From: Schmidtea nova
Taxonomy: Eukaryota
Assembly: GCA_044892505.1 (NCBI GenBank)
Contig: CM097882.1
Location: 471,386,001-471,450,000, forward strand
Direction: 5' to 3'
Length of the DNA: 64,000 nucleotides
The notes below the pieces were generated by a model that worked only from the letters and a program-made list of their open reading frames with translations, did not search any database and was not told the DNA's origin. Positions 6,355 through 55,252 of the stretch are shown here, piece by piece (position 1 is the first letter of the stretch; the number at the start of each line of letters is the position of its first letter). Both the position numbers and the translations under genes were made by a program.

Positions 6355-6429
6355 AGAATATATTTGGATTTGCGTTTGTTTTTAATTATTTCAGTGCCAT
6401 GTTTGTTGTGTTATGAATTTAATTTAAAT

Positions 6430-30369: not shown

Positions 30370-30539
30370 NNNNNNNNNNNNNNNNNNNNNNNNNNNNNNN
30401 NNNNNNNNNNNNNNNNNNNNNNNNNNNNNNNNNNNNNNNNNNNNNNNNNNNNNNNNNNNNNNNNNNNNNNNNNNNNNNNNNNNNNNNNNNNNNNNNNNNN
30501 NNNNNNNNNNNNNNNNNNNNNNNNNNNNNNNNNNNNNNT

Positions 30540-34663: not shown

Positions 34664-35098
34664 GGAGGAATGTCGTTAGTTGCAACTTGTGAGATGTTTA
34701 AAACACTCTAAAGATTTTTATAAAATTATTTTAATAAAAAAAGTATTTTGCAAAGAAAACATCTCGTTTAAAATAAAAAGGATTATCAGCAAAGATTTTA
34801 ATAATTAGAATATTTAAAATTAAATTTAAAATGTACTATAAAAAAGTCTTATTAAAGTTTTTATTAAATATATAGGTTTATTAAAATATAGCTGAAATTA
34901 ATTAAAAATCGTATGTTGAATGTATGTATGAATGTTCTGTATGAAAATTCTGTCAAGAAAAATTACATATTTATTGGAATCTCCTAGCGTTGTTTTATTA
35001 ATTGTTGTAAAAAATACACTTGAAATTTTGTTAAATTAATTAATTATTTAATGATAGACACAATTAATACCCGAAGTTCGGGAAAAGAAGATACTAAC

Positions 35099-36138
35099 AT
35101 GGCGACCACGCTTTTGGCAAATTTTGTCGAACAACCGAAACATTTTGAAATGGGCCAAGATATCCACAAGTTCATAGCAGACATCGAACGTTTCTTCGAG
35201 ATATTAAATATCGAAGGCAGATTAAGAAATAACTTTGTGAGAGCATTTTTATCCGGAAAAGCCATCGAACTATATGATGAGATAACATCAGAAATGGGAT
35301 ATAAAGAAAAATATTAGGGCGTTTTCGAAACCATCAACGTTAATCGAAGATCTACAAGAAGCTCTGAATTATACGAAAGGTAAAGATAGAGTTAACGATT
35401 ATTGGAGGAAGCTGGAAAAGTTAACAGAAGGTATCCTCAAACATAAGATGGATAAAGATACGTTAATGAAGTTTCTACTGTTCCACACATTGGATGATAA
35501 GGAGATGAAATACGATCTCAAAATCCAAGACATAAAGCCTATCGGAGAAATAAAAGCGAGAATGGAGAAATTAGAAAAGATTAAAGACGAGTTAAACGAA
35601 ACCTACAGACCAATTGCAGTGATTTCAAGGAGAACATTTGCTGATACCGGTAAAATTCAGAATATGGAAAACAAAATGCCTGGTGCAAGAAGTAATTTTT
35701 CAAATCAAAACGTCATTCGACATGAAGCTAAACGCTGGGAGGGTAATAAACAAAGTTTTTACCCAAGGACAAGTGGTTTACGCCAAGGAAATCGAGTACA
35801 AGATAATCAATATAAAGGATATAACTACAACAGATATAGCAACGACCAGAAAAGAAAACAATATAAAGATGAGGAAGCTGGCCAACCGAGAAAATACCAG
35901 TGCTGGGCATGCAGAGAATGGGGCCATAGAAGGCACGAATGTCCAAATGTACAATGTACACAGTGCCATAAATAAGGACATTTCAAACATCAATGTTTTG
36001 CAATGAATAACTACAGATCCAGAGGACAGGTTGCCGGTATGGAAGAAGACTATGTGAATGACAACTACGAGGACCAGATACCGACCCCAAATGCCAAAGC
36101 TTTTGTGATGGAGGAGAGCACAAAAGCACAGGACTAAA
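35099..36138 (+). pseudogene. Gypsy gag with two CCHC zinc knuckles
   Basis: CWACREWGHRRHEC and CTQCHK*GHFKHQC; stops and frameshifts. Confidence 0.85.
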
Positions 36139-36399
36139 AGTATGTAATATTCTTGACAGAAACTGTATGTATGCGAATGATTGTGATTGTATGTTTGATT
36201 CTTGTGATTTTAATAGTAAATATTTAAATAATAATTTTTTTAATATAAATAATATTTGTGAATTAAATAGAAATAGTATATATGAATATAACTTTCAAAA
36301 TAGCGAATGTATAAGTTTAATAAATGAAATTAACAGCCACTATGATGCAAGTGGAAGTAGTAGTGAAGAAAGATTACTAACAATTGATTCAAGTATGTG

Positions 36400-39300
36400 T
36401 TTGATGAATGACAGGGATTCAATTATCAGATATGATGCTATGGGAGGCAGACCGAGCGTTGATGTTACTTTGAATGGTAGATGTTTAAGATGTTTGCTTG
36501 ACACAGGAGCAAAAATCAGCGTCATAGACCGCAATATGATTGAGAAATGTTATATAAATAATGTCAAAAAGAGTAATATGAAAGTAAAATGTACAAATGA
36601 CAGTCCCCTTAATATTGTTGGAACTATTATGATAAACATTAAAATTCAAGGAATAAAAGAAAGTAAAGATATACAATTTTATATAGCAGATGAAATTAGA
36701 CCTCAACTAATTGGTGGAATGAACTTTCTGGATGAATTTGGTATCCGGTTGAATATCGATGATTGTATAAATGATAGTCTGATTCGTACGACAAAGTTAT
36801 CGAAATTGTCAGTGAATTTCATAGAAGAAGGATTTATTGAAAGGAAAGTTGAAGATATGGTAATTAATAACCTAATAAACAAATACGAAAATGTTTTTAT
36901 GAAACACAAATGGGATGTGGGGAAAACTGACTTAATGAAACACGAAATAATTACTGCTAGCAAACCTACAGCACTCAATCCAAGAAGACAACCGGCTCAT
37001 CTACTGGATAAAATCGATGAACAAATAAAAGAAATGGAAAGGTTTGGCATTATCAAGGAATGTGAATCACCATGGAATACACCATTAGTATGTGTAAAGA
37101 AAAAAGGGAAAGATGATATTAGAATATGCTTAGACTTTAGAGTGCTAAATAACGTAGCAGATAAATAACGTAGCGCTAAATAACGTATTCCCAATGCCAA
37201 ACATGAATGAATTACTAGATGTTTTGAATGGATCAAAGTATTTTTCAACAATCGATCTGGGAAATGCATATTATCAAGTTGAACTAGAAGAAGAGTCTAA
37301 AATTAAAACGGCATTTTCAACTAAAAATAAGCAGTATTGTTTTAATAGAATGCCTTTTGGAATTGCAGCAGCACCAGGAACATTTCAGAAACTCATGAAT
37401 AGAGTACTAGGAGAATTGAATTGGATAGAAGCGGTAGTATACTTAGATGATATTCTGATTTTCTCAAAAACATTAGATGAGCATTATAGATCGATAGAAA
37501 AAGTATTTCTGAAGATTAAAAAAGCGGGATTAAAAATCAGCCCAGAAAAGTGCTATTTTAAAAGAAAAGAAATTAAATTTGTAGGGCATATAATAAATGA
37601 AGAAGGCATTCAAACGGATCCTAATAAAATAAAGGCAATAAAAGAATTTGATAGACCGAAATGCTTAAAAAAATTAAGAAGTTTCTTGGGACTAGCCAAT
37701 TATTACAGGAAATTCATTCACGATTATACCAAACATGCAAGAGTCTTAGAAGGTCTTTGTGGAAGCAATCAAAAGAAACTTATATGGACAGAAGATTGTG
37801 AAGAAAGTTTTAAAAATTTAAAAGATAATCTGAGTACAACGGCCGTACTGGCATATCCAGATTTCCAAAAGACATTTATATCGGATACATATGCAAGTTT
37901 TGATAGAATTGGAGCTGTCCTCTCCCAAAAGCAAGAAAATGGTAAAGAAAAAGTAGTAGCGTATGGTTCACATGCAATGAGTAAACATGAAATAGGATAT
38001 TGTATAACGAGGAAAGAATTGCTTGCCATTTATTATTTTACGAATCATTTTAAGCATTATTTATATGGTAAACGATTTACATTAAGAACAGATCACAAAG
38101 CAATAACGTTCATGGTGAAAACCAAGAAACCATTAACCCCACAATTTCAAACGTGGATAAATTATTTAAGCAGTCTGGATATCGATTTACAGTACAGAAA
38201 GGGCGATATTCACACAAATGCGGATGCCATGTCAAGAAGTGAATGTACAACATGTATACAATGCCAAATGATACATGGTGATCCAAAAATAGTGAAACTT
38301 AAGACGAGAATACTTTCGATGATGGTCGAAAACAGTGAAAACGTATGGCAAAAGCAGTCAATCGAGATAACAGATATACTAAATGGTAAGATAAGTAAAA
38401 TCGGGAATTTCAAATTTTGCACAGAAAAAGGAATTGTGAAAACTGATAATCATAAAATATGTGTAGTGGTCTAGAAAGCCGATACCCAAAATTCTCTCAA
38501 AGTATTAAAGAAACATAGCCTGCCTCAAACTTTCACTTTATTCAGTGATATTAGATTTTCAACAAGTCATTTTAATGACGAAAAAACTCCAAAAACAATC
38601 TGAGTTTAAAAAAAACAATCTGAGTTTAAAATAATATAAAATTTTAAACTGTGATAAAATTAAAACTTTTATTAAGATTTTTTCGAACAAAACATTTTTT
38701 TGTTTAAATTCTTTGAGTAAATATTTTGGATTCAAAAATATATCTTGTGAAATTTATTCAAGTTGTTAGATTTTTTGAAATAGAATTTTTTACATTTTCA
38801 AGGATTATGATGTTGAAAGCATTGATTATGATTCTTTTATGCTTCTTTACACTTATCTTGTATTATCAAATTTATCAGTGTTCTGCTACAGACAAACAAC
38901 TAATGCATGCCTATGTTTTATATCGACATGGAGATAGAGCACCTGTTATAATATATCCAACTGATAAGAATAGGGAAGACAAGTGGCCTAATGGGATTGG
39001 AGGATTAACAAACCGAGGAATTAGGCAGCATTTTAATTTGGGTATGTTGCTACGACGTCGTTACAAGGACTTCCCTGGGCAATATTTAAACTATTCATTA
39101 ATCTATGTGCGTAGCACTGATAGAGATGGAGCATTAATGTCTGCCGAATCAAATCTAGCAGGTTTATTCTATAACCTATCTAAAGGAATGATCAACAGCC
39201 TAAAGTGGCATCCTTTCCCAATTCAAACGCAATCAATACATATGTGTTTGTCCCCGCTAAAATATGGATACCAGAAAACAAAAGAGAAGAATTTATTTTG

Positions 39301-40209
39301 AATTTTCACAAAAGATTATGTCATGCGGGATATAATAAAGTAATTAAATACATAGAAAACAACTTTGCAATGAAAGATATGTCGAATATAATAAAAGAGG
39401 TAATTCAAAGCTGTGAAAATTGTCAAAGGAGAAAAGTTGTTACTGAGAGAACTAAGGAAGATATAAAAACCCCAGAGAAAGTTGAATTATTTGAGTCAAT
39501 CTTTATAGACTATTGTGGACCTTTCGGGAACAATATATACAACAAGAAATATATATTAGCAATAATTGATCAATATAGCAAATATGTTTCATTAAATGCC
39601 ACTAATTCTCAAGATGAAAAAAGAACAGCATCAATATTAAATCAATGGATATTAAAGTATGGAGCACCTAGAATAATCAATACAGACAGAGGCAAATCTT
39701 TTGAAAGTTCAATGATAAAAGAATTGTGTCAAAGATATAAATCAAGGATGAATCTTTCAAGTCCATATCATCATGCTGCAAATGGACAGATTGAACGTCA
39801 GTTCAGGACGATACGTGATGCACTTCACATAACTTTAAAAGATAAATTACATAAAAGTTGGGTAGAAGTACTCCCAGACGTGGAATTCATGTTAAATTCG
39901 ACGTATCAGAAAACGACTAGTAAAACACCGGCTGAGATGGTTTTCGGTAAAAAGATAATGTTAGAATGGAGCGATGTAGATCCAACAAAAAGATTTAAAG
40001 AAAACCATACAAATATCAGAAGGTTTAATATAGGAGATATAGTACTAATAAAAAAGGATATTCGAAATAAAGATGACGATAGATACGAAGGTCCGGGTGA
40101 AATTATTAATCAAAGACACGATAGAAGTTTTGAAGTAAAAATGCAAAATGGGAAGAACGTAATACGAAACATCGCATGGCTGAAGATTTTTAAAAAGAGG
40201 GGAATGTGA
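36400..40209 (+). pseudogene. Gypsy pol (protease-RT-RNase H-integrase), interrupted
   Basis: LLDTGAKIS; IDLGNAYYQ; VYLDDIL; DTYASFDRIGAVLSQ; H..LCH/CENC; FIDYCGPF; TDRGKSF; GQIER; RYEGP. A small duplication with a stop near 37160 and a 796-bp insertion at 38462-39257. Confidence 0.95.
38807..39229 (+). pseudogene. Histidine acid phosphatase (lysosomal/prostatic type) N-terminal fragment inserted in Gypsy pol
   Basis: Signal-peptide-like start, VLYRHGDRAP (RHGxRxP), WPNGIGGLTNRG..QHFNLG..LRRRY, YVRSTD..ALMSAESNLAGLF, WHPFPIQT. C-terminal HD half absent. Confidence 0.9.
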
Positions 40210-41899
40210 GATATTTAAAAACACTCTAAAGATTTTTATAAAATTATTTTAATAAAAAAAGTATTTTACCAAGAAAACATCTCGTTTAAAATAAAAATGA
40301 TTATCAGCAAAGATTTTAATAATTAGAATATTTAAAATTAAATTTAAAATGTACTATAAAAAAGTCTTATTAAAGTTTTTATTAAATATATAGGTTTATT
40401 AAAATATAGCTGAAATTAATTAAAAATCGTATGTTGAATGTATGTATGAATGTTCTGTATGAAAATTCTGTCAAGAAAAATTACATATTTATTGGAATCT
40501 CCTAGCGTTGTTTTATTAATTGTTGTAAAAAATACACTTTTGAAATTTTGTTAAATTAATTAATTATTTAATGATAGACACAATTAATACCCGAAGTTCG
40601 GGAAAAGAAGATACTAACACAACTCATCGATTAAAGATCTATGAATTAGAATCAACTCTAATGTGAAAACATCAGAGACCTAATAAATACCATAAAAAAC
40701 TAGCGTGGAAAATGACCGATGTCATAATTAGAATCAACTCGAGAATCAGCAGAAAAAAATGTTTATGGTGTTTAAATCTCAGGCGAAACATCGAAAAGAA
40801 AAATAAACTGAACTAGTCATACAATTATTAAAATGAAAATTATTGATTTAAATAAAAATATATAAGAAACCAAAATATAATTATGATAACATGTTTTACG
40901 TTGGTCCAGCAGACTCGCATTTTCGAGGAATTTGATTGAGACTTGAAAAACCTTCCGACAGCAAAAATGTTGATCTCAACGGCAAATCATAATAATATTA
41001 CATATAAATGTAAATTAAATTAGAAATTATCTTTAATTTTAAATCCTATTAATATAAAAGCTAATGAATAGTTGAAAATGAAACGTTCTTGCATATATTT
41101 TTAAAAACTAAAAATAGAACGTATCGCAAAACTCCACATTTTACAAGATTTTGATTTATATATTTTTAAAGAAATTTTTTAAATTTACTAAGGTAAAATA
41201 ATTTGATATATACATACTACTTGTTTTAGTAAGTAATACCAAATGCAGTTTGATTTATCTTTCTAGACTATGATAAATCCACTTCATTCAAAAAGTTTCA
41301 TTTTTATAATTACTTGAAAAAAGATGAGATGAAAATTCGGTTGCTTTAAAAATAAATTTTGATCTATAGTCTTTATATAAACAATAAAAAGGTAAATCAT
41401 GTCTGGGTTTATTAAAATAATTAAAAATCTAATTTATAATTACTGTAGTGCCTCCGTCATATATATATTTATTTATATTATAACTTATTTAATATATTAT
41501 ATTTACAAAACTAAATTAAAAAAGGGAGATTTATAAAAAAGTTTGTTTAAAAGAAGAAAAAGAGATATCTGATTTGAAATTAAAACGCAAGCAATTACAA
41601 TAAATTTGAAATCCAAAACTCAAGAAATTTATAATTGATTTGAAATCCTAAACGCAAGAAATTTATAATAGATTTAAAATCAAAAACGCAAGAAATTTAT
41701 AAACGCAAAAAAATTGGAAAACTCAGAAAAGAAGATATTTTTTAAATAAATGTGTATTGAATATTTCTTCTTGTTTAATTTTGTTTTAGAGGTATCTGCA
41801 ATGAAAGTTGCAACCCCTACAATTACTATTAATAAAATGTATTAATGATTTTATTGTCAAATTTCAACATGAAAAAAATATTATTTTTATAATTATTTT

Positions 41900-43082
41900 T
41901 AATATATAATCAATGATTCCCATAATGAATCACTATAGATCAAAATTTCTTTAAATAAGTACACAATATTTAAGCACAGCCTTTATCAGGTGTGTATTTC
42001 AATCGTTATATTAACTTAATCCTAAATACTAACTTTAATTATTTATTTTATATCTTATAAAGATTTTATTGGATGAAAAAAATGTATTTTAATTTTCTTT
42101 TTAAACATCATTTTTTTGTGCGAATTTAATGTTGATGGACTGTTTGTATTTTTTGATGTAAAAAGTCTAGGAAGCTAATCTTTGTAATGAATTTTTGAAT
42201 CCCTCTTGTATAATCTGGCATTTTGTTTCTTCTATAGATGGAGTTGTTTTATGTACTCTTTCCCAGTGTTCGTAATAATTACTGGTTTTGGTTTTAGTGT
42301 GTTCATTAAGTTGGGTGCGAAAAGTTCTATGTGTTTATCCTATGTAAGTAGCGTCACATTTTTGACAAGAAAGTTTATAAACTATTTTTTTGGAAAAGCA
42401 AAAGCATTGGGTTGTGGAAAGGCAAAGACATTTATGTTTGGAGATGTTGGAAATTAGTGGCTTTCGGAGTTGTGATTTTAACGGTGTGGAGGTTATGAAA
42501 GTAGAACGAATGTGGATAGGCAAATCTGTTTGATTAAAAATGTTGGTGATTTTATTGGCTGCAGTGTCATTTAAGAAAGGTAATCTCAGATATGTTGTGT
42601 GTTTGCTATTGTTATTGTGTTTCAGGCGTTTCTTATTGTGTTTATTGTGGTATGGTTCGTTAAAGAAGTGTTTCTTTACAAATTCTTCAGGGTATCTATT
42701 TTGGAGGAATCGTGTTTTGAAGTTTTCTAATGTTTTTTGTATTTTGTTTGCGTCTGAACAGTTTCTTATGGCTCTTTTTCTTTCTACTATTAGTAATGTG
42801 ATTTTGCGTTGAAGTAGAACGTGGCTTTTCAATGGGAGGATATGACCACTATGTAAACTTTTAGATTATAAATCGGTGTTTGCATATAGTGTATCTGGGT
42901 CTTTTGTGAAACTTACCATGGTATCTAAAAATGGTATTTTACCTTCTGTGTTCGGTGTTTCAAAAGTGAATTGTATGTTGGTGTTAGTTGAATTTGCATG
43001 TGATAGGATTTGATTGAAAGGGATTGTGGAGACTATGAAGATGTCGTTGATGTATCGTTTCCAGAAAAGTATTTTGTCTTCA
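41900..43082 (-). mobile_element. Penelope-like element family 1, copy B (5'-truncated)
   Basis: Colinear with 6430-7610; YIND instead of YIDD; stops; degenerate hammerhead motif at 41961-41993 (-). Confidence 0.92.
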
Positions 43083-43149
43083 TAAAAACTACTACAAAAC
43101 TTCAAACGCCTTTTTCGAGTCGATTAACCAGCTCGATTGAGTTTTTAGT

Positions 43150-44590
43150 GAAACAATAGATCGACAGAATTTTATTGTTTATAAAATGGCTTGATCAAAA
43201 AATTAGTTTGTTTTTGTGTTTGTAATACACGCGTGTTTTGTAATTAATTTTGCATTTTTCATCAATATAAAATAACTTTATTGAGTTTTCGTTGTAATTA
43301 CATGTATATAAAATTTAATTGTCTACAAAATAGCTTGATTCAAAATTCTGTATGTCATTAAGCTTGTCATGCACACATGTTTTGTAATTAAATTTGTATA
43401 TTTCACATAAATAAAGTAACGCTATTGAGTTTTCATTGCAATAAAGTATAGAAAAAATTTAATTTTCTATAAAATGGCTTGATTAGAAATCTGAAAGTTG
43501 CCGTATTTTGTAATGTACACGTGTTTTATTTTTAATTTACAAATTTTCAACAATAAAAAGTAACTTTATGTATTTTTCATTGTAAAAAGTATAAATTTAA
43601 TTTAATTTCTTATAAAATGGCTTGATTAGAAAATTAATTTGTTGGTTTGTTTGTAATGCACACGTGTTTTGTAATTAATTTTGAATTTCTCATCTATATA
43701 TTAAGTTTTCGTTGTAATTACATGTAGATAAAATTTAATTGTCTACAAAATAGTTTGATTCATTGTAATATTGTGTGTATATAATTTATATGTCTACAAA
43801 ATAATTTAATTGGAAATTTAGTGTTATGGTGAGTTTTTAATACATGCATGTTTTGTACTTAAATACATCCGTGTTGCATTACGGTTTTGTAAAAAAACTT
43901 TTATTTTTCACCTATTTAAACAATTTTATTGAGTTTTCATTGTAATAAAGTATAAATAAAATATAAATTGTTATAAAATAACTTGATTAAAAATTTGTCG
44001 AATTTTGTGATATGCGTGTTTTGTATTAAAATTTGTAATTTTTCCCATATATACAGTAACTTTATTGAATTTTTATTGTAATATTGTAAGTGTAAAGTTT
44101 AAATTTCTATAAAATGACTTAATTAGAAATTTGAAAGTTGTCGTCTTTTGTGTTGCACATGTGTTTTGTGGATAAGGTTGTAAGTTTCAACTATTTCAAA
44201 TTATTTTATTGAGTTTTTATTTTAATAAATTGTGTGAAAAATTAATTTTTTACAAAATGGCTTGATTGAAAAATTTGTTAGTCGAATTTTGTGATGCACA
44301 TGTGTTTTTTTTATTAATTTTTACATTTTTCATCTAAATGAAGTAATTCTATTGAGTTTTCATTGTAATAAAGTATAGATAAATTTTAATTTTCTATAAA
44401 ATGGCTTGATTCATAATTTAAAAGTTATTATTCTTTGTGTTAAATATATAATTATTAATTAAATTTTACATTTCCCACACATATACAGTAACTTTATTTA
44501 ATTTTTATTGTAATATTGTAAGTTTAAACTTTAATTTTCTATAAAACGGTTTGAAGGTTGTCGTACTTTGTGTTGCACATTTGTTTGAAT
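43150..44590. repeat. ~144-bp degenerate satellite, about 10 units
   Basis: AAATGGCTTGAT-type motif at 43184, 43328, 43472, 43615, 44112, 44255, 44399 and 44544. Confidence 0.88.
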
Positions 44591-45253
44591 TCTTATAAAA
44601 TCTTTGAATAAATTAAGGTGATTTGGAATACTTTTTATATGAATACTGGATACATTTCTGAATGAATTCTTTGAAAAGGAATATTTTGAGTTCAGAATAT
44701 ATTATTTTTAACTACTTTGTTAAAAGGTTCTGGTCATTTTATACGTTTTTAATAAAATTATTAGATATTGACTTATTTTTAACAGTTTATTAAAGAATAT
44801 TAAGTGGAAATATATTTTTTAATTAAAATTTACTATTTGATTACGTTTTGTTAAAAGTTCTTGAGTGTAGAATATATTTGTAATTAAAATTTACCGCTAG
44901 ACTAAATTTTATTGTTGTGAAATATAATTTGAATAAATATTTTGAGTGTTGGTTTAATTTTATAAAACAAATAAGTCATCCGACAAATGTTTTTTTCAAA
45001 AGATATTTCAAGAAATTGAAATAATGAAGCTAAGGCAGTCGGGTGCGCTTGCAAACAGTTTCTGTTGAACACTTTTAGTGCGCAGAGGTGAAAATGAAAT
45101 TCATACGCTATGTTTGCAAGTTACAGATTATCTGTAGGACCTTGCATATTCAAGTGATGTTTTATCCAGTGTACCAGGTATAGTATATAACAAAAATCTT
45201 TCGACTTTGTTTTATACTTACCTGGCGCGGAGAGAAATTTTCGCGTCTCCTGC

Positions 45254-45295
45254 ATAGCACTGATGAGAGCCAAAAGCTCGAAACTAGTCTGCTAT
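45254..45295 (+). ncRNA. Minimal type I hammerhead ribozyme, copy 1
   Basis: ATAGCA-CTGATGA-GAGC CAAAA GCTC-GAAA-CTAG-TC-TGCTAT: 6-bp stem I, intact core, 4-bp stem II, palindromic ACUAGU stem III, GUC cleavage triplet (predicted cut 45289/45290). Confidence 0.95.
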
Positions 45296-45636
45296 TGGGG
45301 ATTTGCACTGGGTATCACAAAAAAAATCACAAGCTTTTTTTTGTTTAAAACAAATAAGTCATCCGACCAATTTTTTTTTCAAAAGATATTTCAAGAAATT
45401 GAAATAATGAAGCTAAGGCAGTCGGGTGCGCTTGCAAACAGTTTCTGTTGAACACTTTTAGTGCGCAGAGGTGAAAATGAAATTCATACGCCATGTTTGC
45501 AAGTTACAGATTATCTGTAGGACTTTGCATATTCAAGTGATGTTTTATCCAGTGTACCAGGTATAGTATATAACAAAAATCTTTCGACTTTGTTTTATAC
45601 TTACCTGGCGCGGAGAGAAATTTTCGCGTCTCCTGC

Positions 45637-45678
45637 ATAGCACTGATGAGAGCCAAAAGCTCGAAACTAGTCTACTAT
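45637..45678 (+). ncRNA. Minimal type I hammerhead ribozyme, copy 2
   Basis: Identical core; the 3' strand of stem I reads TACTAT (G>A mismatch); predicted cut 45672/45673. Confidence 0.9.
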
Positions 45679-47183
45679 TGGGGATTTGCACTGGGTATCA
45701 CAAAAAAAATNNNNNNNNNNNNNNNNNNNNNNNNNNNNNNNNNNNNNNNNNNNNNNNNNNNNNNNNNNNNNNNNNNNNNNNNNNNNNNNNNNNNNNNNNN
45801 NNNNNNNNNNNNNNNNNNNNNNNNNNNNNNNNNNNNNNNNNNNNNNNNNNNTTTAATATTTATCGTATTTGACCTTGTAATTTATTTTGTTTTTGTGCGT
45901 AGTCGTCTAATTATGTTATATTTTTATAATAATTTGAGTATTGTTTTCATTGAACGGTCATCATTGAAGTTGTTCAAAAATAATAATAACAATAATAAAT
46001 TATACTAACAAAAATAAATTAATAATAATTTATATATTTTATACAATAAAATGTAAATTGAAGATATTTCAAAAATAAAAGTTTTCAAAATTTTCATAAA
46101 TTTCAAAAATTTTTTATTTTAAATATTGCAAATTGATTTTAATTTATCACTTGGTCAAATTTTTTTTAATCAAGATTTTACAAAATTTCACTTATTAATT
46201 CCATAATTAATGGAAATTTTAATAATTCATTGAATATAACTACTAATTTGCAAAATAAAGAAATTCGTGGCATAGTAATGCTCAAAATTTTTTTAAATTG
46301 CAGAAAATTAATTATGAAAATTGTTCATCAAATTTCATTTCCGGATTTAAAGTTGTTTTTAATTTATTGTACGAAAGAAAGCAAAGAACTTCGCAAATGT
46401 CACTTCATGGACAAATCTGTATTGGCTGTCAATGTAAAATGTTATATATATGTGTGTGTGTAGATTATTCATTAAAGAATAATTCTGATTTTTGGGCATA
46501 CTTTTATTGATACAGCCCGGCCAAAAATAACCATAAACCACACACTATTTATAATTATTAATATTTATTTAAAAATCTATGCTTTAACAAAAAAAATACA
46601 TATTTCGAATACTTTTTCAACAAGTTCAAGAGTCACTATTCACAACAGAATGATAATCACCAATTTTCTATCACTTCTCTTTATTCTTAAAATATTCAAG
46701 TTTATTAGTGTGCGTAAGAGTGTTTGAGCACATACGACTTATCTTATTTTCCAGTGCCTTAATTGTTTTTACTTGGCTGTGCGGGTATATAAATAGAATT
46801 TACAAAATAGAGGTAATAAAAACAAAAATAAAAATAAAAAAATTACAGTTAGACACAAATTTAAGTTGATAATAATTAATTGTTTAAATGGGAAACAAAT
46901 TTTAGTGACTTCATAATTCAAATATTAAAATTGTTGTTTATAAAGGATTCTTAGATTACGTGAATGTAAAATTGTAATCTAATTTATCATTAATAAAATA
47001 ATATTAATTTATTTCGATTGATGAAACAAAAATTAAAGTTTGGAAATTAGAAATTGTCCGTCAAATTACTGTATCCTTTTTTTGAATTTATATAAAATTA
47101 GATATGGATGGCGGTTGACCAACAGACAATGGCATTATGAAAATAATTAAATAGAAACAGTATTTAATTTTCAGATAAAAATT

Positions 47184-48964
47184 GATTTAACGATCTATAT
47201 AAGCAACTTCTCTATAAGCAACATTCTTTATAAGCAACCTCTATATAAGCAACCTTTTTATGTTCAATCGCTCTGTATAAGCAACTTATTTTTTTGAATA
47301 TGGATTGTTGACTTAAGTTTAGACTTTTTAGGTATAAACTCCTCTGACCACGGCTAATAAATTTAAAATCGTAAAAAATTTGTTATTTTAATATGTTTCT
47401 CTTTTATGCTGCCGGTATTGAAGAATAGTTATATAAAATCTGTTAACTCATTAATTAATAAATTAATATTTTAATATATTTGTATTTTAAATTTAGCCAA
47501 AAAATGAATCAGAAGGAAAAAAGACGTTCTATTTCCCTAAAGGATAAACTGTCAATTTTAAAGGAAATTGAAAATGGTAAAAGAACAAGGGAAATTTGTA
47601 TTGAATATAAAGTTGCTAAGTCTACAATAAACAGACTAAAGGAAAATAAAGAAATTCTAGAAGAATATGCATCCAAAACCTATGTAAATCAAGATAAGAT
47701 AAAGCGAATGAAGACAATAAAGTATAGTGAAATCGACAATGCAGTGTTTTCTTGGTTCTTGGAGCGGCTACAGCTTAACGATTTGGTTCCAAATGAAATT
47801 ATAAAATTAAAGGCACTTGAAGTAAAAGATTGAGTAATGGTCCCAAAACATTTGTAGCAAGTGATGGATGGTTAACAAAATTTAAAAAACGTCATGGTTT
47901 ACGGATCTTATCCGTTTCTGGGGAGAGTACGTCTTGCAACTGGTTTAATGAGATATTTATACCTTCAGTAACTCGACACTTAAAATCTAAAAATCTTCCA
48001 GTTAAGGCTCTACTCTTAGTAAATAATGCAATCTGCCATGGGTCCGAGGATAACTTCACTGGCGACCCAAATTTTAAAGTTAGGTTTCCCCCCCTAATAA
48101 TACGCCATTATTGCAATCATATAATTTAAAAGATGTTGTTTATTTAGTTGTGCAAGCCTGGGATGAAATTCCTGTGTCAGTTATACAAAATTCATTTAAA
48201 CATCTTTTCCTGTCAGGTGATGAAATTCAAAACAACATCCATTCTGACCACTTTTCCGAAGAAGACGATATTCACCTACCAAGATTGTATAATTCGATAT
48301 TTAATGATTGTAACTTGGCTGATAATGAAATTATGGATTGGGCAAGTGGAACAAGCGAGGCATATCATTTATTTGACCTTGAAGAAAATATAGGGCTAGA
48401 AAATGAAATTTATTTGACCTTGAAGAAAATATAGGGCTAGAAAATGAAATTTATTTGACCTTGAAGAAAATATAGGGCTAGAAAATGAAATTTCTCCTGC
48501 CGAAGAAGGCGAAAAAAACTCGGAAGACACTAATAAATACACTGATGATGTTATAAATTCTTTTAATTTGGTGGTAGAATGGGCAAAAGAAAATGATTTA
48601 CCTTGTAACGAGATTCTATTGCTGCAAAGAATGAGAGAAAAGGCTATTATTAAAAAATATATGTAATTATTTGTGTTTGTTTAGGCAATTAGTACCGTAT
48701 TTAACTAAATATTTATTAAAATTTGATTCTTTAATTTTTCAAAACAGAATTAATAACTAGGTTTATAAAATAAAATATTGTTTTCATTTGTATAAGAAAC
48801 TAAAAATATTTTTTCTACACAGTTGAAGTATACAAATAAATAACTAAAAATATTTTCTAGGCGGTATATATTTTTATACTCCTTTTTTCCCTATAAGCAA
48901 CTTTTCTATATAAGAATATTTTTTTAATTGGTTCTTATGAGTTGCTTATATAGAGCGTTCACTG
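47184..48964 (+). mobile_element. Tigger/pogo DNA transposon, internally deleted
   Basis: TIR (CAGTG)AACG(C/A)TCTATATAAGCAAC. CENP-B-type HTHs (RRSISLKDKLSIL; IDNAVFSWF; ASDGWLTKFKKRHG); DDE_1 (WFNEIF; LLLVNNAICH). A 3 x 41-bp tandem duplication lies at 48367-48490. Confidence 0.9.
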
Positions 48965-51390
48965 TATTATAATAAAATTAAATAATAAAATTATAAATTA
49001 GCATAATAAATTAAATATAAGTAATGAAGTTATTAATTGGCTTGACTATAAATTAAATTTTTAAGAATGATTGAAAATTAAAAATATAAAATATTTATTG
49101 ATTGCTTGTATATGGATATTCTCTATTCCAGAGGTGTCAACTAATTTTCCTATAAGATCTACTTCGCGCAGTAAAAATCCCCTGCGATCTTCTGTTTCTA
49201 AAAGTAAGAGTAAGAGTAGAAGGCAATATTTAACGAACTAAATTTCACGAATTTTAAAATTTCTAACATATACTTATTTAAATTATATTAAATAAAAATA
49301 AAAATCATATCGATAATATTTTTAATAGTTATAATTAAAAACATTCACAAACTTTACATATTTAAAAAAAAATATAATTTTACTTTTATTGATTATGATA
49401 ATGTCATCTGTTAAGAAGGAAACTGAAAGATACAAAAATATAATTATATTATTTTTACATCTAAAGTAACTTACGTAAGAATAGGCAAAAACTCATTTTG
49501 AACTTCCTGATGCTACAATATTTGAATTACTTATTCTACATTGCATCGTGTCTATAATTTGTACATAATTTGGTGAATAATTACTCAGACCATTTCTCAA
49601 GCAGGATTCTAAATATTCGCCTGTTAAATTAGTTCAGTATTTCGACTTTATTATTTTCATATGTGAAAATGCTGATTCGCAAAAAAATGTCGAATCAAAA
49701 CAGGCGTATAAATTTTCAGCACATCTTTTAGATCCAGATATTTATCTTCTTCTAAATGTTAGAAGATGGGCGTACAATAAGGGTTTTAAAATTAAAATAT
49801 TATACATTAGGAAATGGAAGGGACAGAATAAATATACATGTGGATCAGATGGCAATGACAATTCAATAATCAATGGAAAATATCAACTTCAATGACATTA
49901 TGATTTTAGTGATTCTATATGATGATATTTTACTGTTGATCTTATTTGACTTTTGTTTTATGATGATAATTATCTATTGTATATTCATGAAAATTATGTG
50001 ATTAAGCTGTCACTATCTGACAATTTTTATTTTATGGGATAATTTTATTTTGTAAAATATTGTTGACAATTAATTTTTGTAATGAAAATTTATCAGCATG
50101 ACAATTTATAATTTGACAATTTATCATTTGTGATCTTGCAAACTTTTATTGACATTTTTTATGGTGATGGACAAAATTTGATATAATTTTGAAAGAATAT
50201 TTTGTTTTGAAAATATTTATGTAAATTAAGTTTTTGAAAATGGATTATATTTGCATTTATATTTTAATATTTTAATTCAATAAATTATAATAATAATAAT
50301 AAAAGAAATAAATAATACAGATTGTTTAAATAAATTTAAAATAAATAAATTTAAAATAAATAAATTACTGTTTGTTTAATTAAATTATATTTATGACCTA
50401 CAAAGGTCAGAAAAATGAAATAATATCCCAAGGTTAAAAAATAATTTTTGAAAACAATTCTGTTTTGAAAACAACTTTATTTTCAAAACAATTTTAATCA
50501 ACTCAAGAAGCAAAATAACAATCATTATTGACAAATTAAGTGCCTTAAAATTTAGTATATAAACTCACTGATTTTTCAGTCAAATCACCCATAAAATCTT
50601 TGCGTAAGAAGAATTTCATAGTTGTTATCGACTATTGAAATAATAATTTCGAGCATACAAGATATCGAGCTCAGAAGGCATTCACACACACACACAAACA
50701 CATATATATATATATAGTAAGCCAAATCACAAATAAATACGATTGATTTTTTATTAAAACGTATCTTAAACTATAATAATTATTTCAACAACTTACAAAT
50801 TGTTTTTTTTTGGATCAAGAAAAACAGATATCAAGAAACTCCTTGACAATTTCCTATATTATTATTATTTCAACAGTAACAGATTTAAAGAAAATCCCTG
50901 ACAATTTCTTTCATTATTTTTATTATTTCAACAATTTGGATAAAGAGTAACAGATTTTAAGAAAATACCTGGCAATTTCCTTCATTACTATTATTGTTTC
51001 AACAATAACTGATTTAAAGAAAATCCCTGACAATTTCCTTCATTACTATTATTGTTTCAACAATAACTGATTTAAAGAAAATCCCTAACAATTTCCTTCA
51101 TTATTATTATTATTTCAACAATTTACAAATTGTTACTTTTGAATAAAGATTAACAGATTTAAAGAAACCCCTGACAATTTCCTTACACCGAAGATTAACC
51201 AAATCTATTACGTTCTAACAATCTACTTCAAACTACTATTCCTATCAATATTAAAAGACTGTCTGCCTATCGTAAAAGTAACTTTTGTGATTTTAGTTAT
51301 ATAATTTTCAGTAAATAAAATTGTTCAAAATAGAAAAAAAAATAATATTAATTGAGAAAACCCGAACAACTAACAAACTATTTTGAACAA

Positions 51391-54300
51391 TTACAAATGT
51401 TCTGTGCGGATATTTCGTTTAATGGGACAATTTCGAACCAGTTTGTTTTCCTGTCGATGATTGTCAGTAGGTAGTTCTACCCGTTGTTCGGTGGCAACGG
51501 TCCTACTATGTCGATGTGAATCGTCTCGAAAGGTTGACTGCTTGGAAAGTTTACTTTTTGTGCTTTTGGTTTTTTTGATTTTTTGCTGATTTGACACCTT
51601 TTGCACGTTTTGACGAAATCTTTGATTTCTTTCCTCATGTTTGGCCATATGTATTTGTTGTGGATTATTTCATAGATGGCTTTGCTTCCTGGGTGACTGA
51701 TGTCGTGTATTTTTGACATACACATTTTTCTAAACTCTTTTGGTAAAAGTATTCTTGGTGTAGTTTCGTTGCTGACATCGTACCAGAAGTCACTTCTTTT
51801 CTCTAGTTGCAGACTGTGTTTTATTGGTAGTTCTTTTAAGGTTTCTGATTGTTTGTTTTTGATTTGTTCGTTTTCAATCAGTTCCTCGAATTCGAGTGCA
51901 TTTATATCTGTTCCGATTCTCGAGAGGGTATCTGCTGCGATATTTGAGGCTCCGGCTATATAATTAATTGTGCAATTAAATTGTGATATGTAATTTAATT
52001 GTCTTATTTGTCGTGGCGATGGGTTTTTCATTTGTATCGCGTTTGTTAACGGTTTGTGGTCCGTATAGATTTTGAGGTTTCTTGCTTCTTATAGGTGCTG
52101 GAAGTGTTAAATGGCTTCATGTATCGCGAGTAATTCTCGATCAAAAGTTGAATACCGTGTTTGATGTGTTTTTAGTTTTTTAGAGAAAAACCCGATTGGC
52201 TGTTTGCCGTATTCGTTATCTTGATATAAGGTTGCGCCCATTGCATATCCAGAGCAGTCTGTTGCTAGGTTGTAGTCTAGTTCTGGATTTGGATATCCGA
52301 GTAATGTTGCTTGGGATAAGCTTGTTTTTGCTTTTTCAAACTGTTTGGTAGTTTGTTCGGTCCAGTTTATTTTAATATTTCTTCTTGTTTTGAACAGGTC
52401 GTTTAGTGGAGCTAACAATTCACTGCAGTTAGGGATGTACGCGTGGTAAAAGTTTACCATTCCCAAAAATCGTCTTAACTCTCTGTTTGTGTTTCGTAAT
52501 TTGAACTCTTGTATCGTGCTTATTTTCTTGTTTATTGGCTTCGTGCCTTTTTCGTCCAGTGTGTGTCCCAGAAAATTAATCTCTTTTTTCAAAAATTCGC
52601 ATTTTTGAATGTTTATTTTGAGATTTGCGGAGTTCAGCGTTTCAAACACCTTTTCAATGTCTTTTAAGTGAGTAGTTTTGTTTGGACTTGCTATGAGGAT
52701 GTCGTCCAAATAAGCTATAGTGTTCTGGTTAGTTTTCAAGGTCTTGTCCATGAAACGTTGGAATGTTGCAGCTGTGTTTCGCAAACCAAATGGCATTCTG
52801 TTGTATTCGAACATGCCGATTGGTGTTACGATTGGTGTTTTTTTAATGTCTTCGTTCCTGATGGGTATTTGGTGGTAAGCCTTCTGTAAATCTATTTTCG
52901 AGAAAAGTCTTGCACCTTTTAGTCTGTTTATTATGTCTCTAATGATAGGCAGTGGGTAGTTGTCTGGTTCTGTGATTTTGTTGAGCATTCGGTAGTCACC
53001 GCAAGCTCTCTATTTCCGGTTTGTCTTTTGTTTGAGCATGAGTGCTGAGGACCAATCAGAGTTCGAGTGAGTTATTATTTTGTTTTCTAGTAACTCCTTG
53101 AAAATTTCGTTTGTAATTTTTGTTTTTTGTGGATCTAGTTGTCTCACCTTTGTATGCACTGGGTTTCCGTTTGTTATGATTGCATGTTCGGTGGCGTGAT
53201 ACGCGTTTTTGTCAAAGGTTACTGGTTCAGTGAGTTTTTCAAATTTTCCCAGTAGTTTATTTATTTCTGGGTCATGATTCAATTTTAGTTTTTGTTTATT
53301 GTTAGGTGTCCATTTTTGGTTTTCCTCCGTTGCTCGAGTTGTGCTGTGGTGTTGTAGTATTAGTATTATTTTCTATTATTTGTTTGTTTTTACAATCCAC
53401 TAGGAGGTTGTAATTTGTTAGGAAATCTGCTCCTATTATCGCTTGTTCGACCTCAGCTATAGTGAATGTCCAGTTGTAGTTCTTTTTATTTATGTTTAAA
53501 TATATTGTTTGTTGCCCGAAAGTTTTTATGTTCGTGCCGTTAGCTGCTGTTAATGGTTTTTAGATTTTGTTGGCATTTTTATACATAAAATGGGGCAGTA
53601 ATGAAATCACCGAGCCGGTGTCTATTAAATAATCTATGTTGTTTGTGTGCACCCAAAATGTGTTGTTTTTGTCACCTGATGTGGGTGCTATCATTGGTGA
53701 CCTTATTGGTTTCCCTGCTCTGTTTTATTGAATTCGCAGGGTTGTGTGCAATTAAAGGCTTTTTCACCGAATTTGTTGTGTAAATAGCAGAGGTTTTTGT
53801 TTATATAATTATTCCTTGGATCTCTTTCAGGAATTTTGTTTCTGTAATTGTTGCCTTGATTTATGGAGTTCGACCGGTTTCTGTAATTGTTGTTTGGTGA
53901 TTGATTCCGGCTGTAGTTTTGTCTATTATATTCTGAGGGTTGGTTGTAGAATCGTTTGTTTTGACCGTTGGATGTTTGGTATCTGTTGATTGTATCGTAT
54001 GATTGTGTTGAGTTAAAGTTTTGTTTATTACATCGTTCTTTTATTTCGGCTAGTTCTGTTTTAATTTGTTTGTTTTCTACAATTATTTCGTCGAATTTGC
54101 CGATTAGTGTGTTTAATAGTTTGTTCATGTTGTCGTTTGTTTCGTTGTATTTGTTGATTGGTAGATTATTGTAGTTAGTTTTGTTTTTGTTGTGGTTTTG
54201 GGTGCTGCATATAGTCGGATAAATTTCCTCGTTGATCTTATCCGCTATGTCGGCAAGCGTTTCAACATCGGCGTTGTTGCTGGCTGCCAGAATCCTCCTG

Positions 54301-55203
54301 ATTTCTGGTGGCGTTGCTCGCATGAAAAATTCTTTTACTAGTTCATTTGAACATGAGTTTGTGATATTCAGTTGGAGGTATTCCAACTTTTGCTTTAATT
54401 GTCTGAGGAAATCAGTGGGTTTATTGTCCCTAACTGGGTGTTGTTCAGGCATGATTCGAGCATCTGCCGTCTGTTTATTTTATTTTTGTTCGTAAGGATG
54501 TTGCACAGTTTGTTAAAGGGGTCGTCATCCTTAGAAATTTCTTCAATCTGATCCGCGATTTCATTACGTTTGTTACTGGGGAGTGTAGCTAAGATGTTGG
54601 AGCACAGAGTTTTTGTGGATTTTATACCGGAAAGGGTTAGTGTCAATTTGGCAAATTCCAGCCATTTTTGTGGAGTACCATTTTCATCAGTGAAGTAGTT
54701 TGGTAGGTTGGGGTTCGGGTTCGGGTTAATTACAGAGTTTATGGTGTGTGTGTTTTCGGGGTTGTAATAGTAGCTGTTGTTTTGGTGTTGGGATTGTGCA
54801 TTTTCGTTGTCAATGGGTGTTTGGGTAATATTTGTTTGGTTTAGTTGGTTGGTTGCCATCGCTTTTATTTATGTGTTGCTTGTTGATGCAAATAAATCGA
54901 GTTTGTTTCAAGGATATGGCTTACTGTGTTCAGCCAAAAGATCTCACTTTCCTTTATAGTTCTATAATAACTATTCTAAAAGAAAAAGGTGATTTGAAAA
55001 AAGAATTTCGTCGAGTGTGTGTATTCTTTATTTACTTCTGACACCAGTTGTAATGAATGCTTTTATATGTTTGTACGACGCAGTATCTTGTGTGTGTAAA
55101 GAAATGTTGTAGTGCCCGAGAGAGTTCTCCTAAATTATGTGGAGACGGTCGGGGTGTATGCTTATATACTATTGTATGCGTGCGTGCGTGTGTATATACT
55201 ACA
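51391..55203 (-). mobile_element. Ty3/Gypsy element (CsRn1-like), 3'-truncated inside integrase
   Basis: 155-bp 5' LTR 55049-55203 (TGT..ACA); PBS TGGTGTCAGAAGT (tRNA-Leu type); gag 54859-53703; RT/RNase H (IDLQKAYHQ, YLDD, YSTFDRELLAI); integrase HHCC and HIDIVGPLP. No 3' LTR. Confidence 0.93.
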
Positions 55204-55252
55204 ATCTCAAAAAAAACTAATAATTGAGAAAAACCGAACAACTAACAAACTA

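What the first reader, a model, noticed from the sequence alone, without database searches (positions are those of the whole stretch)
45172..45312. The ribozyme monomer carries an exact U1 snRNA 5'-end sequence masked in a hairpin by a splice-donor mimic
Seen: ATACTTACCTGGC (45224-45236, repeated 383 bp later) is the conserved first 13 nt of U1 snRNA, the part that reads 5' splice sites. It lies 18 nt upstream of hammerhead stem I. It forms the 3' arm of a hairpin with CCAGGTATAGTATATAACAAA (45174-45194), which itself resembles a donor site. ATTTGCAC (45301-45308) resembles the U1A-binding loop AUUGCAC. Inference, three options: the monomer descends from a U1 snRNA/ribozyme chimera; the RNA carries a switchable anti-splice-site arm; or the motif matters as a perfect CAG/GTAAGTAT donor on the antisense strand (U1 recruitment or splicing). 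I do not know of a described retrozyme with this arrangement.
Basis: partly seen in the sequence, partly recalled or inferred. Interest (0 to 1): 0.8.

Follow-up and report, generated by a model that had tools for sequence, protein, structure and literature searches.

The report
U1-like 13-mer inside a hammerhead retrozyme repeat
A 383-bp tandem repeat carrying a self-cleaving hammerhead ribozyme (an animal-type "retrozyme") really does contain the exact first 13 bases of U1 snRNA buried in a strong hairpin, but nothing else in it resembles U1, and with only two near-identical copies I cannot tell coincidence from a splice-site or U1-derived module.

Summary
ATACTTACCTGGC lies at 45214-45226 and 45597-45609, not 45224-45236. 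It sits in a 383-bp tandem repeat (44963-45710, 1.95 copies, 98.6% identical, running into an N gap). Each copy carries a complete type I hammerhead with a palindromic, loop-less helix III, the kind that cleaves as a dimer.

The 13-mer is the 3' arm of a 21-bp hairpin (-20.5 kcal/mol, z -6.7). The 5' arm is the consensus splice donor with one extra U. Chance expectation for the exact 13-mer is about 5e-4 per window and 1e-5 per monomer.

U1 similarity stops there. The Rfam U1 model gives 7.7 bits against a threshold of 69.5, there is no Sm site, and ATTTGCAC is commonplace. The locus is a typical non-LTR retrozyme, and Penelope-like element fragments lie in the same window.

No further copies could be retrieved, so conservation and covariation are untested. 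My weights:
- about 0.4: a structural arm of the circular RNA with no U1 ancestry
- about 0.25: a real donor/exon unit on the antisense strand
- about 0.2: a captured U1 gene 5' piece or transcription start

The result is intriguing but unresolved.

The parts
44963..45710 (+). Tandem array of a 383-bp monomer. It holds 1.95 copies at 98.6% identity (5 substitutions) and is cut off on the right by the N gap 45711-45851. Monomer GC is 36.6%, against 28% for the window.
45254..45295 (+). Type I hammerhead ribozyme, copy 1. Helix I is AUAGCA/UGCUAU, followed by the CUGAUGA core. Helix II is GAGC/GCUC with loop CAAAA, followed by GAAA. Helix III is the palindrome ACUAGU with no loop. The predicted cleavage site is after GUC, at 45289|45290.
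   Evidence: Rfam RF00163: 27.6 bits, E 3.3e-5 in the 141-nt search, below the gathering score of 34. The core was read directly from the sequence.
45637..45678 (+). Type I hammerhead, copy 2 (23.1 bits). One G>A change at 45674 puts a mismatch in helix I. The predicted cleavage site is 45672|45673.
45214..45226 (+). 13-mer identical to U1 snRNA nt 1-13, copy 1. Nt 45214-45225 form the 3' arm of the hairpin.
45597..45609 (+). The same 13-mer, copy 2.
45174..45225 (+). Hairpin of 21 bp. The 5' arm, CCAGGUA[U]AGUAUA..., is the consensus donor CAG|GUAAGUAU with one bulged U. The 3' arm contains the U1-like 13-mer. Free energy is -20.5 kcal/mol on the sense strand and -24.6 on the antisense strand, z about -6.7 on both. 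The copy 2 equivalent is 45557-45608.
45224..45247 (+). Second hairpin with a GAAA tetraloop, directly after the 13-mer (-13.7 kcal/mol when folded with the 13-mer alone). It lies where U1 stem-loop I would begin, but has no sequence similarity to it.
45301..45308 (+). It is commonplace and is paired in the predicted fold (arms 45158-45171 and 45306-45319).
45214..45226 (-). On the antisense strand this reads GCCAG|GUAAGUAU, a perfect consensus 5' splice site with junction 45222|45221. Together with its copy at 45609-45597, these are the only CAGGTAAGT in the whole window.
45308..45330 (-). Acceptor-like site on the antisense strand: a T8 tract, then GUGAUACCCAG|. It would bound an 86-nt 'exon' (45307 down to 45222). 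A CUUAU branch-like motif lies near 45358.
   Evidence: Sequence. The base rate of such a motif 40-250 nt upstream of a random position is 7-11%.
45317..45344 (+). A8/T8 hairpin (ACAAAAAAAA / TTTTTTTTGT). The T8 run, other T4-T7 runs, and a T4 at 45238 would each stop RNA polymerase III on the sense strand.
41877..43088 (-). 5'-truncated Penelope-like element: reverse-transcriptase C-terminal part plus a GIY-YIG region. It is 89.6% identical to a second copy at 6416-7612. This is a candidate autonomous partner family for the retrozyme. No hammerhead was found in its 3' region.

Best explanation
The locus is a short array of an animal-type (non-LTR, Penelope-associated) retrozyme.

Proposed life cycle:
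1. The array is transcribed as a multimer, by Pol II or read-through, because T-runs would stop Pol III.
2. Hammerheads of adjacent units pair through the palindromic ACUAGU helix III and cleave after GUC (45289|45290 and 45672|45673).
3. This releases 383-nt monomers, which a host RNA ligase circularises.
4. A Penelope-like reverse transcriptase copies the circle back into tandem DNA.

In that RNA, the U1-identical 13-mer is the 3' arm of a 21-bp hairpin. The hairpin is one of several arms of a compact fold that is about 70% paired, and it keeps the RNA stable and the ribozyme off after ligation.

On this reading the 13-mer has no U1 ancestry and no U1-like activity. Its identity to U1 is either coincidence or simply the mirror image of the donor-consensus-like opposite arm.

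What is shown and what is inferred:
- Shown: the repeat, the ribozyme motif, the 13-mer, the predicted hairpin and fold, the lack of further U1 similarity, and the Penelope-like fragments nearby.
- Inferred from the literature: transcription, cleavage, circularisation and mobilisation.

Confidence that this is a retrozyme is about 0.85. The confidence given below is for the claim that the 13-mer is only structural.
For: For the retrozyme:
- A 383-bp tandem repeat with one type I hammerhead per unit.
- Monomer GC of 36.6%.
- The monomer folds far better than shuffled sequence: z -7.06. The circular MFE is -112.8 kcal/mol with 70% of bases paired.
- These are the defining traits of metazoan non-LTR retrozymes in PMC7229834.
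- Penelope-like RT/GIY-YIG fragments lie in the same window. This fits the PLE link proposed in bioRxiv 10.64898/2026.07.22.740005.

For a purely structural 13-mer:
- The 13-mer is paired with probability 0.86-1.0, and the hairpin has z -6.7.
- The U1 model scores only 7.7 bits against 69.5. Beyond nt 13 only the mere presence of a hairpin is shared.
- There is no Sm motif, and ATTTGCAC is commonplace.
- The insect PSEA core ATTC-CAA is absent upstream.
Against: - The exact 13-mer is expected only about 1e-5 times per monomer, or 5e-4 per window. Pure coincidence is therefore itself an unlikely event.
- The identity runs one base (C45226) past the end of the stem, which a purely structural origin does not explain.
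- The opposite arm is the donor consensus with a single inserted U. An acceptor-like site lies 86 nt upstream on the antisense strand. TATATA sits at -30 to -25 from the 13-mer's first base.
- Conservation among copies is untested.
Confidence: 0.4

Rival explanations
1. Splice-site module. The selected or captured entity is the consensus 5' splice site on the strand opposite the ribozyme (GCCAG|GUAAGUAU, junction 45222|45221). Together with the upstream T8...CAG acceptor-like site it defines an 86-nt exon, with a 297-nt intron between units. Antisense transcripts of the array would recruit U1 snRNP. The outcome could be splicing, suppression of polyadenylation or nuclear retention. Alternatively the piece is a relic of a captured exon-intron junction. 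The U1 identity on the ribozyme strand is then just the complement.
For: - The donor is complementary to all 11 pairing positions of U1, and these are the only CAGGTAAGT in 64 kb.
- A branch-like CUUAU, a T8 tract and CAG lie 86 nt upstream on the same strand. The base rate for such a site is 7-11%.
- U1 binding to 5' splice sites inside circular or non-coding RNAs has precedent in EIciRNAs (PMC5814467).
Against: - The donor is buried in a -24.6 kcal/mol hairpin on that strand, which should hinder U1 access.
- Matches at exon positions -4 and -5 are not explained by donor selection.
- No reason is known for a retrozyme to need antisense splicing.
- No expression data are available.
- The acceptor motif was defined after seeing it.
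Confidence: 0.25
2. U1 gene-derived piece. The monomer captured the start of a U1 snRNA gene, possibly with its proximal promoter, so that each unit has its own snRNA-type transcription start at A45214. An RNA starting there would carry a free U1-like 5' arm (nt 1-10), then a GAAA-tetraloop hairpin, then the hammerhead. It would end by self-cleavage at 45289, giving 76 nt. This would be a natural U1-head/hammerhead chimera able to pair with 5' splice sites.
For: - The identity begins exactly at U1 nt 1 and runs 13 nt, one base past the stem.
- The next base, G, matches insect-type U1 as I recall it. That is from memory and was not verified (one search found no printed sequence).
- A stable hairpin starts where U1 stem-loop I starts.
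- TATATA lies at -30 to -25.
- A fold of 45214-45289 leaves nt 1-10 unpaired.
- Precedent for a ribozyme satellite with an snRNA-type internal promoter: newt satellite 2 (Coats et al. 1994, cited in PMC2220036). The schistosome satellite has an internal Pol III promoter (same source).
Against: - There is no U1 similarity beyond nt 13: 7.7 bits against 69.5. There is no Sm site.
- The insect PSEA core is not found at the expected distance. The host is unknown, so this point is inconclusive.
- A T4 at +25 would stop a Pol III (TATA-type) unit.
- TATATA occurs about 3 times per kb here.
- A promoter spacer complementary to +1..+13 is not expected in a real U1 gene.
- A capped U1 5' end is not a substrate for the ligation step of the retrozyme cycle.
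Confidence: 0.2
3. Sense-strand mini-intron inherited from a Penelope-like element. The donor would be CAG|GUAUAG (45177|45178, the bulged arm). The branch-like UACUUAC lies inside the 13-mer. A pyrimidine-rich stretch follows, then the acceptor AUAG| at 45257. This gives an 80-nt intron, and its removal would destroy helix I of the hammerhead.
For: - All four elements can be read in order on the ribozyme strand.
- Penelope-like elements are known to retain short introns (my knowledge of Arkhipova et al. 2003, not checked here).
- Retrozymes are proposed to derive from PLE terminal repeats.
Against: - The donor is weak, lacking G at +5, and it is paired.
- All motifs are short and were found after the fact in AT-rich sequence.
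- The PLE fragments in the window share no similarity with the monomer and show no hammerhead.
Confidence: 0.05
4. The antisense strand encodes a spliced-leader-type small RNA, that is, a tandemly repeated gene with a donor site followed by an Sm site.
For: - The unit is tandemly repeated and carries a perfect donor folded in a stem-loop.
- A U-rich GAUUUUUGU lies downstream.
Against: - The U-run is base-paired and does not fit the R-A-U(3-6)-G-R pattern.
- There is no Rfam SL RNA hit.
- The opposite strand carries a complete hammerhead, which SL genes do not.
- Only two copies are present.
Confidence: 0.02

Closest known systems
Metazoan non-LTR retrozymes (Cervera & de la Pena 2020, PMC7229834; PLE link in bioRxiv 10.64898/2026.07.22.740005)
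   Same: Tandem repeat within the 150-450 bp range. One type I hammerhead per unit. GC below 45%. A highly self-paired predicted monomer. Penelope-like elements in the same genome region.
   Different: No U1-identical or splice-site hairpin is described in those papers (term searches). Only about 2 copies are seen here. Expression and circularity are untested.
Newt satellite 2 and schistosome Sm-alpha hammerhead satellites
   Same: Tandem units of a few hundred bp. Type I hammerhead with a very short helix III. Both have internal promoters: snRNA-type Pol II in the newt and Pol III in the schistosome (PMC2220036).
   Different: In the newt it is promoter elements of snRNA genes that are present, not snRNA coding sequence. 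Here only the first 13 nt of the U1 coding sequence are seen, and no promoter element could be recognised.
U1 snRNA gene or pseudogene (Rfam RF00003)
   Same: Nt 1-13 are identical. A hairpin begins at about the position of stem-loop I.
   Different: No four-way junction, no U1-70K or U1A loops, no Sm site. The score is 7.7 bits against a gathering score of 69.5.
Viroid/U1 similarity and the 'escaped intron' idea (mentioned in PMC5680766)
   Same: A small self-paired circular RNA of the ribozyme/viroid world shows a short sequence relationship to spliceosomal snRNA.
   Different: The viroid case involved imperfect similarity, and PMC5680766 lists it as one of several successive origin hypotheses. 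Here the match is exact over 13 nt and starts at U1 nt 1.
EIciRNAs that bind U1 snRNP through a retained 5' splice site (PMC5814467)
   Same: A circular RNA carrying a donor-type sequence could tether U1 snRNP.
   Different: Those circles come from back-splicing and expose the donor. Here the donor-like arm is bulged and paired, and the circle would be made by ribozyme cleavage and ligation.
Engineered U1 snRNA-hammerhead chimeras and snRNA-headed SINEs (SINEU). Both are from my own knowledge and were not checked here.
   Same: A U1 part joined to a hammerhead, or to a retroelement.
   Different: The chimeras are artificial and keep the U1 body. SINEU heads are much longer than 13 nt.

Membership tests
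Hammerhead ribozyme, type I | Conserved catalytic core: CUGANGA, GAAA and an NUH cleavage triplet | tested here: met
   CUGAUGA, GAAA and GUC are present in both copies.
Hammerhead ribozyme, type I | Three helices around the core, with helix I open-ended | tested here: met
   Helix I has 6 bp, extended after an internal loop. Helix II has 4 bp. Helix III is the ACUAGU palindrome, which gives only 2 bp within one molecule but 6 bp in a dimer.
Hammerhead ribozyme, type I | Rfam RF00163 gathering score of 34 bits | tested here: not met
   27.6 and 23.1 bits (E 3.3e-5 in the 141-nt search). The shortfall comes from the loop-less helix III.
Hammerhead ribozyme, type I | Self-cleavage activity | not testable with these tools
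   Needs in vitro transcription of a dimer.
Non-LTR (metazoan) retrozyme | Tandem repeat of about 150-450 bp with one type I hammerhead per unit and GC below 45% | tested here: met
   383 bp, 1.95 copies, GC 36.6%. Criteria are from PMC7229834.
Non-LTR (metazoan) retrozyme | Monomer RNA predicted to be compact and highly self-paired | tested here: met
   z -7.06. The circular fold is 70% paired.
Non-LTR (metazoan) retrozyme | Penelope-like elements in the same genome | tested here: met
   RT C-terminal part plus GIY-YIG fragments at 6416-7612 and 41877-43088.
Non-LTR (metazoan) retrozyme | Many dispersed arrays in the genome, and expression as circular RNA | not testable with these tools
All collection scans came back empty.
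U1 snRNA gene/pseudogene | 5' end AUACUUACCUG | tested here: met
U1 snRNA gene/pseudogene | Four-stem architecture and overall similarity (RF00003, gathering score 69.5 bits) | tested here: not met
   7.7 bits, E 5.8. There was no hit at all in the 821-nt search.
U1 snRNA gene/pseudogene | Sm site R-A-U(3-6)-G-R | tested here: not met
   No match on either strand of 44963-45710.
U1 snRNA gene/pseudogene | U1A-binding loop AUUGCAC in stem-loop II | tested here: not met
   Only ATTTGCAC is present. It is paired in the predicted fold, is not aligned to the loop by the model, and is commonplace.
U1 snRNA gene/pseudogene | Proximal sequence element about 55 bp upstream | tested here: inconclusive
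   The insect core ATTC-CAA is absent at 45151-45171. However, PSEs are lineage-specific and the host is unknown.
Functional 5' splice site (antisense strand) | Consensus CAG|GUAAGU | tested here: met
Functional 5' splice site (antisense strand) | Accessible to U1 snRNP | tested here: not met
   Buried in a -24.6 kcal/mol hairpin (a prediction).
Functional 5' splice site (antisense strand) | Used in RNA | not testable with these tools
   No transcriptome is available.
Spliced-leader RNA gene | Donor followed by a single-stranded Sm site, and a match to an SL RNA model | tested here: not met

The most novel reading that the evidence does not exclude
Each retrozyme unit carries a natural U1-head/hammerhead module. 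This could be a U1-gene-derived transcription start giving a small RNA with a free anti-5'-splice-site arm. Or it could be a circular RNA whose anti-splice-site arm is unmasked when the hairpin opens. Either way, a selfish ribozyme RNA would be able to pair with host 5' splice sites or compete with U1 snRNP.
Probability: 0.08. Interest if true: 0.85.

Novelty: new member of a known kind. Interest (0 to 1): 0.45.

Why it matters
How animal retrozymes are transcribed, and whether their abundant circular RNAs do anything to the host, are open questions. A conserved module that mimics U1 or recruits U1 would be the first link between these ribozyme circles and the splicing machinery. It would also echo the snRNA-type promoter of the newt hammerhead satellite. 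If instead the 13-mer drifts freely among copies, this is just one more species-specific retrozyme, and a reminder of the old viroid/U1 similarity that came to nothing.

Tried and rejected
Searches for more copies all failed:
- blastn and nhmmer of the monomer against the window found only the two copies.
- A family-specific hammerhead pattern found nothing in viral, metagenome or prokaryotic genome collections.
- An arrangement-specific pattern, U1 12-mer plus hammerhead, found nothing in the same three collections. These negatives say little, because the family itself is not in those collections.
- Exact look-up of two monomer ORFs found nothing.
- A word-based protein search with the 62-aa monomer ORF found nothing.

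Literature:
- String searches for the ribozyme and for the 14-mer and 17-mer found no paper.
- The retrozyme paper's supplement holds no such motif.
- Coats et al. 1994 is not held.

Other attempts:
- Host identification through the Ty3/gypsy RT gave hits of at most 69% identity, mostly unnamed metagenome fragments. The host remains an unknown AT-rich animal. It is not human.
- The insect PSEA comparison was negative but inconclusive.
- The Penelope-like fragment's 3' region has no hammerhead and no similarity to the monomer.

Rejected:
- The U1A-loop reading of ATTTGCAC.
- A Pol III unit starting at 45214, because of the T4 at +25.
- An SL RNA gene.

The five differences between the two copies all lie outside the hairpin. 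Only 0.7 differences would be expected there, so this is uninformative.

Full report
**What is there**

Positions 44963-45710 hold 1.95 copies of a 383-bp unit, 98.6% identical with five substitutions. The array runs into an assembly gap at 45711-45851. I left the gap as it is. No other copy, even a degenerate one, exists in the 64-kb window.

Each unit carries a type I hammerhead on the + strand, at 45254-45295 and 45637-45678.
- Rfam RF00163 scores are 27.6 and 23.1 bits. The E-value is 3.3e-5 in the 141-nt search and 1.9e-4 in the 821-nt search. Both scores are below the curated threshold of 34.
- Reading the sequence shows why the scores fall short. All core nucleotides are present (CUGAUGA, GAAA, GUC). 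Helix I has 6 bp and continues after an internal loop. Helix II has 4 bp. Helix III is only the palindrome ACUAGU, with no loop.
- This is the design of hammerheads that cleave as dimers, known from newt, schistosome and Penelope-like elements. That comparison is from my own knowledge, and the general class is described in PMC7229834. A cofold of two motifs is more stable than two separate folds, -24.8 against 2 x -11.0 kcal/mol.
- The predicted cleavage sites are 45289|45290 and 45672|45673.

The 383-nt monomer between the cleavage sites is predicted to be very structured. As a linear RNA it has z -7.06 against shuffles. As a circle its MFE is -112.8 kcal/mol with 70% of bases paired. Monomer GC is 36.6%, against 28% for the window.

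**Context**

The window is AT-rich, gene-poor and full of repeats.
- There are Ty3/gypsy remnants.
- There is a Tc5/pogo-like helix-turn-helix ORF.
- There are two 5'-truncated copies of a Penelope-like element on the minus strand, at 6416-7612 and 41877-43088. They are 89.6% identical and contain the RT C-terminal part and a GIY-YIG nuclease.

Taken together, the locus meets every sequence-level criterion for metazoan non-LTR retrozymes (PMC7229834; the PLE link is in the 2026 preprint).

The host could not be identified. The best relatives of its gypsy RT are unnamed environmental fragments at 69% identity or less. It is clearly not human.

**The observation**

The 13-mer ATACTTACCTGGC is present exactly, twice, at 45214-45226 and 45597-45609.

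The U1 covariance model confirms that these 13 bases equal its positions 1-13.

The 13-mer is the 3' arm of a 21-bp hairpin, 45174-45225.
- Free energy is -20.5 kcal/mol with z -6.7.
- Pairing probability in the circular monomer is 0.86-1.0.
- The 5' arm reads CCAGGUA[U]AGUAUA. That is the consensus donor CAG|GUAAGUAU with a single bulged U.
- On the antisense RNA the same hairpin is -24.6 kcal/mol. There the perfect donor GCCAG|GUAAGUAU is the 5' arm, and a U1-like arm with one inserted A is the 3' arm.

The 'donor mimic' is therefore the automatic consequence of a hairpin involving a U1-like arm, and the reverse holds too.

**Chance**

Under order 0-3 background models the exact 13-mer is expected 4-7e-4 times in the window. 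It is expected about 1e-5 times in one monomer counting both strands. These two sites are also the only CAGGTAAGT in the window. The match is improbable, but it was noticed after the fact.

**Is it U1?**

No, not beyond the 13-mer.
- In the 821-nt search U1 does not appear at E<=10.
- In a 141-nt search it reaches 7.7 bits, E 5.8, against a gathering score of 69.5.
- The alignment shows identity over nt 1-13 and then only a hairpin where stem-loop I would start: GGCGCGGAGA-GAAA-UUUUCGCGUC, -13.7 kcal/mol.
- ATTTGCAC is not aligned to the U1A loop. It is paired in the predicted fold. AT{1,3}GCAC occurs 30 times in the window.
- No Sm-type motif occurs in the array on either strand.

**Promoter idea**

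Newt satellite 2, the classic hammerhead satellite, is driven by an snRNA-type promoter. The schistosome satellite is driven by a Pol III promoter (PMC2220036 citing Coats 1994 and Ferbeyre 1998). I therefore asked whether A45214 could be an snRNA-type start.

In favour:
- TATATA lies at -30 to -25.
- An RNA starting at 45214 would leave nt 1-10 single-stranded, followed by the tetraloop hairpin and the ribozyme.

Against:
- TATATA occurs about 3 times per kb here.
- A T4 at +25, and further T-runs, would stop Pol III.
- The invariant insect PSEA core, ATTC-CAA, is not at the expected place (PMC1761439; sequence).

Because PSEs are lineage-specific and the host is unknown, this remains open.

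**Antisense reading**

On the minus strand the perfect donor (junction 45222|45221) is preceded, 86 nt upstream, by an acceptor-like site. It consists of a CUUAU branch-like motif, a T8 tract and CAG|. This site would bound an 86-nt exon, and 297-nt introns would separate the units.

A motif of this kind lies 40-250 nt upstream of only 7-11% of random positions. That gives a modest, post hoc boost. The strong hairpin around the donor argues against efficient use.

A weaker sense-strand reading also exists. It is an 80-nt mini-intron running from the bulged donor to AUAG| at 45257, with UACUUAC as the branch site. I rate it low.

**What could not be done**

The decisive test is conservation and covariation across copies.
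- All pattern scans of the viral, metagenome and prokaryotic genome collections were empty.
- Monomer ORFs are not on record.
- The two copies differ at only five sites, none in the hairpin. With 0.7 differences expected there, this tells us nothing.
- Literature searches found no description of a U1-like or splice-site hairpin in retrozymes and no printed match to the ribozyme.
- One historical parallel exists. Early viroid work noted snRNA similarity and proposed 'escaped introns' (PMC5680766). My recollection, not checked here, is that the idea did not hold up.
- EIciRNAs show that circular RNAs can tether U1 snRNP through a donor site (PMC5814467).

**Verdict**

The element is a new member of the known class of animal retrozymes, with confidence about 0.85.

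For the 13-mer, rough likelihood reasoning puts three readings within an order of magnitude of each other. My priors for the two biological readings are guesses:
- about 0.4: a structural arm of the circular RNA, whose U1 identity is coincidence or the mirror of its donor-like partner;
- about 0.25: an antisense donor/exon unit;
- about 0.2: a captured U1 5' piece or transcription start;
- the remainder: minor options.

I commit to the first as the single most likely reading, but it is not a majority view. The finding deserves a cheap follow-up in the full genome rather than dismissal.

Noticed in passing
window 43133-44586: A satellite of about 144-145 bp, roughly 10 diverged units (66-75% identity). 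It lies between the Penelope-like fragment and the retrozyme array. It has no similarity to the retrozyme monomer.
   Followed up: partly
window 6416-7612 and 41877-43088 (minus strand): Two 5'-truncated Penelope-like element copies, 89.6% identical, each with the RT C-terminal part plus a GIY-YIG nuclease. No hammerhead was detected in the 3' region of the second copy.
   Followed up: partly
window 34688-40619: A Ty3/gypsy element bounded by 415-bp LTRs that are 98.3% identical (34688-35099 and 40205-40619). Its protease, RT-RNase H and integrase lie in separate ORFs.
   Followed up: partly
window 38726-39301 (+): Inside that gypsy element, between RNase H and integrase, an ORF matches the N-terminal ~115 residues of histidine acid phosphatases, including the RHGDR motif. 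The match is Pfam His_Phos_2 at E 4e-14, and prostatic acid phosphatase structures at E 1e-25. It may be a captured host gene fragment.
   Followed up: partly
window 51477-54859 (minus strand), flanks 50713-51313 and 57258-57654: A second Ty3/gypsy remnant (RT, RNase H, integrase zinc finger, a DUF7041-like ORF). It is flanked by segments in inverted orientation that carry 58-bp tandem repeats.
   Followed up: no
window 30539-31159 vs 55247-56141: A segment of about 0.6-0.9 kb is duplicated at 94-97.5% identity: one block (30563-31159 / 55247-55838) is in direct orientation and a second (30539-20820 / 56141-55857) is inverted. The first copy adjoins the N gaps 30370-30538 and 31655-32036.
   Followed up: no
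window 26049-26408 (minus strand): An isolated ORF with a partial TATA-binding-protein domain (Pfam TBP, E 7e-7). The neighbouring ORFs at 24.7-27.5 kb have no family match.
   Followed up: no
window 47480-47833 (+): An ORF with CENP-B N-terminal and Tc5 transposase HTH domains. It is probably a pogo/Tc5-type transposon remnant, about 1.6 kb downstream of the gap that ends the retrozyme array.
   Followed up: no
window 32037-32170, 32391-32768 and 48367-48493: Further tandem repeats with periods of 61 bp, 120 bp, and a perfect 41-bp repeat (3.1 copies, 100% identical).
   Followed up: no
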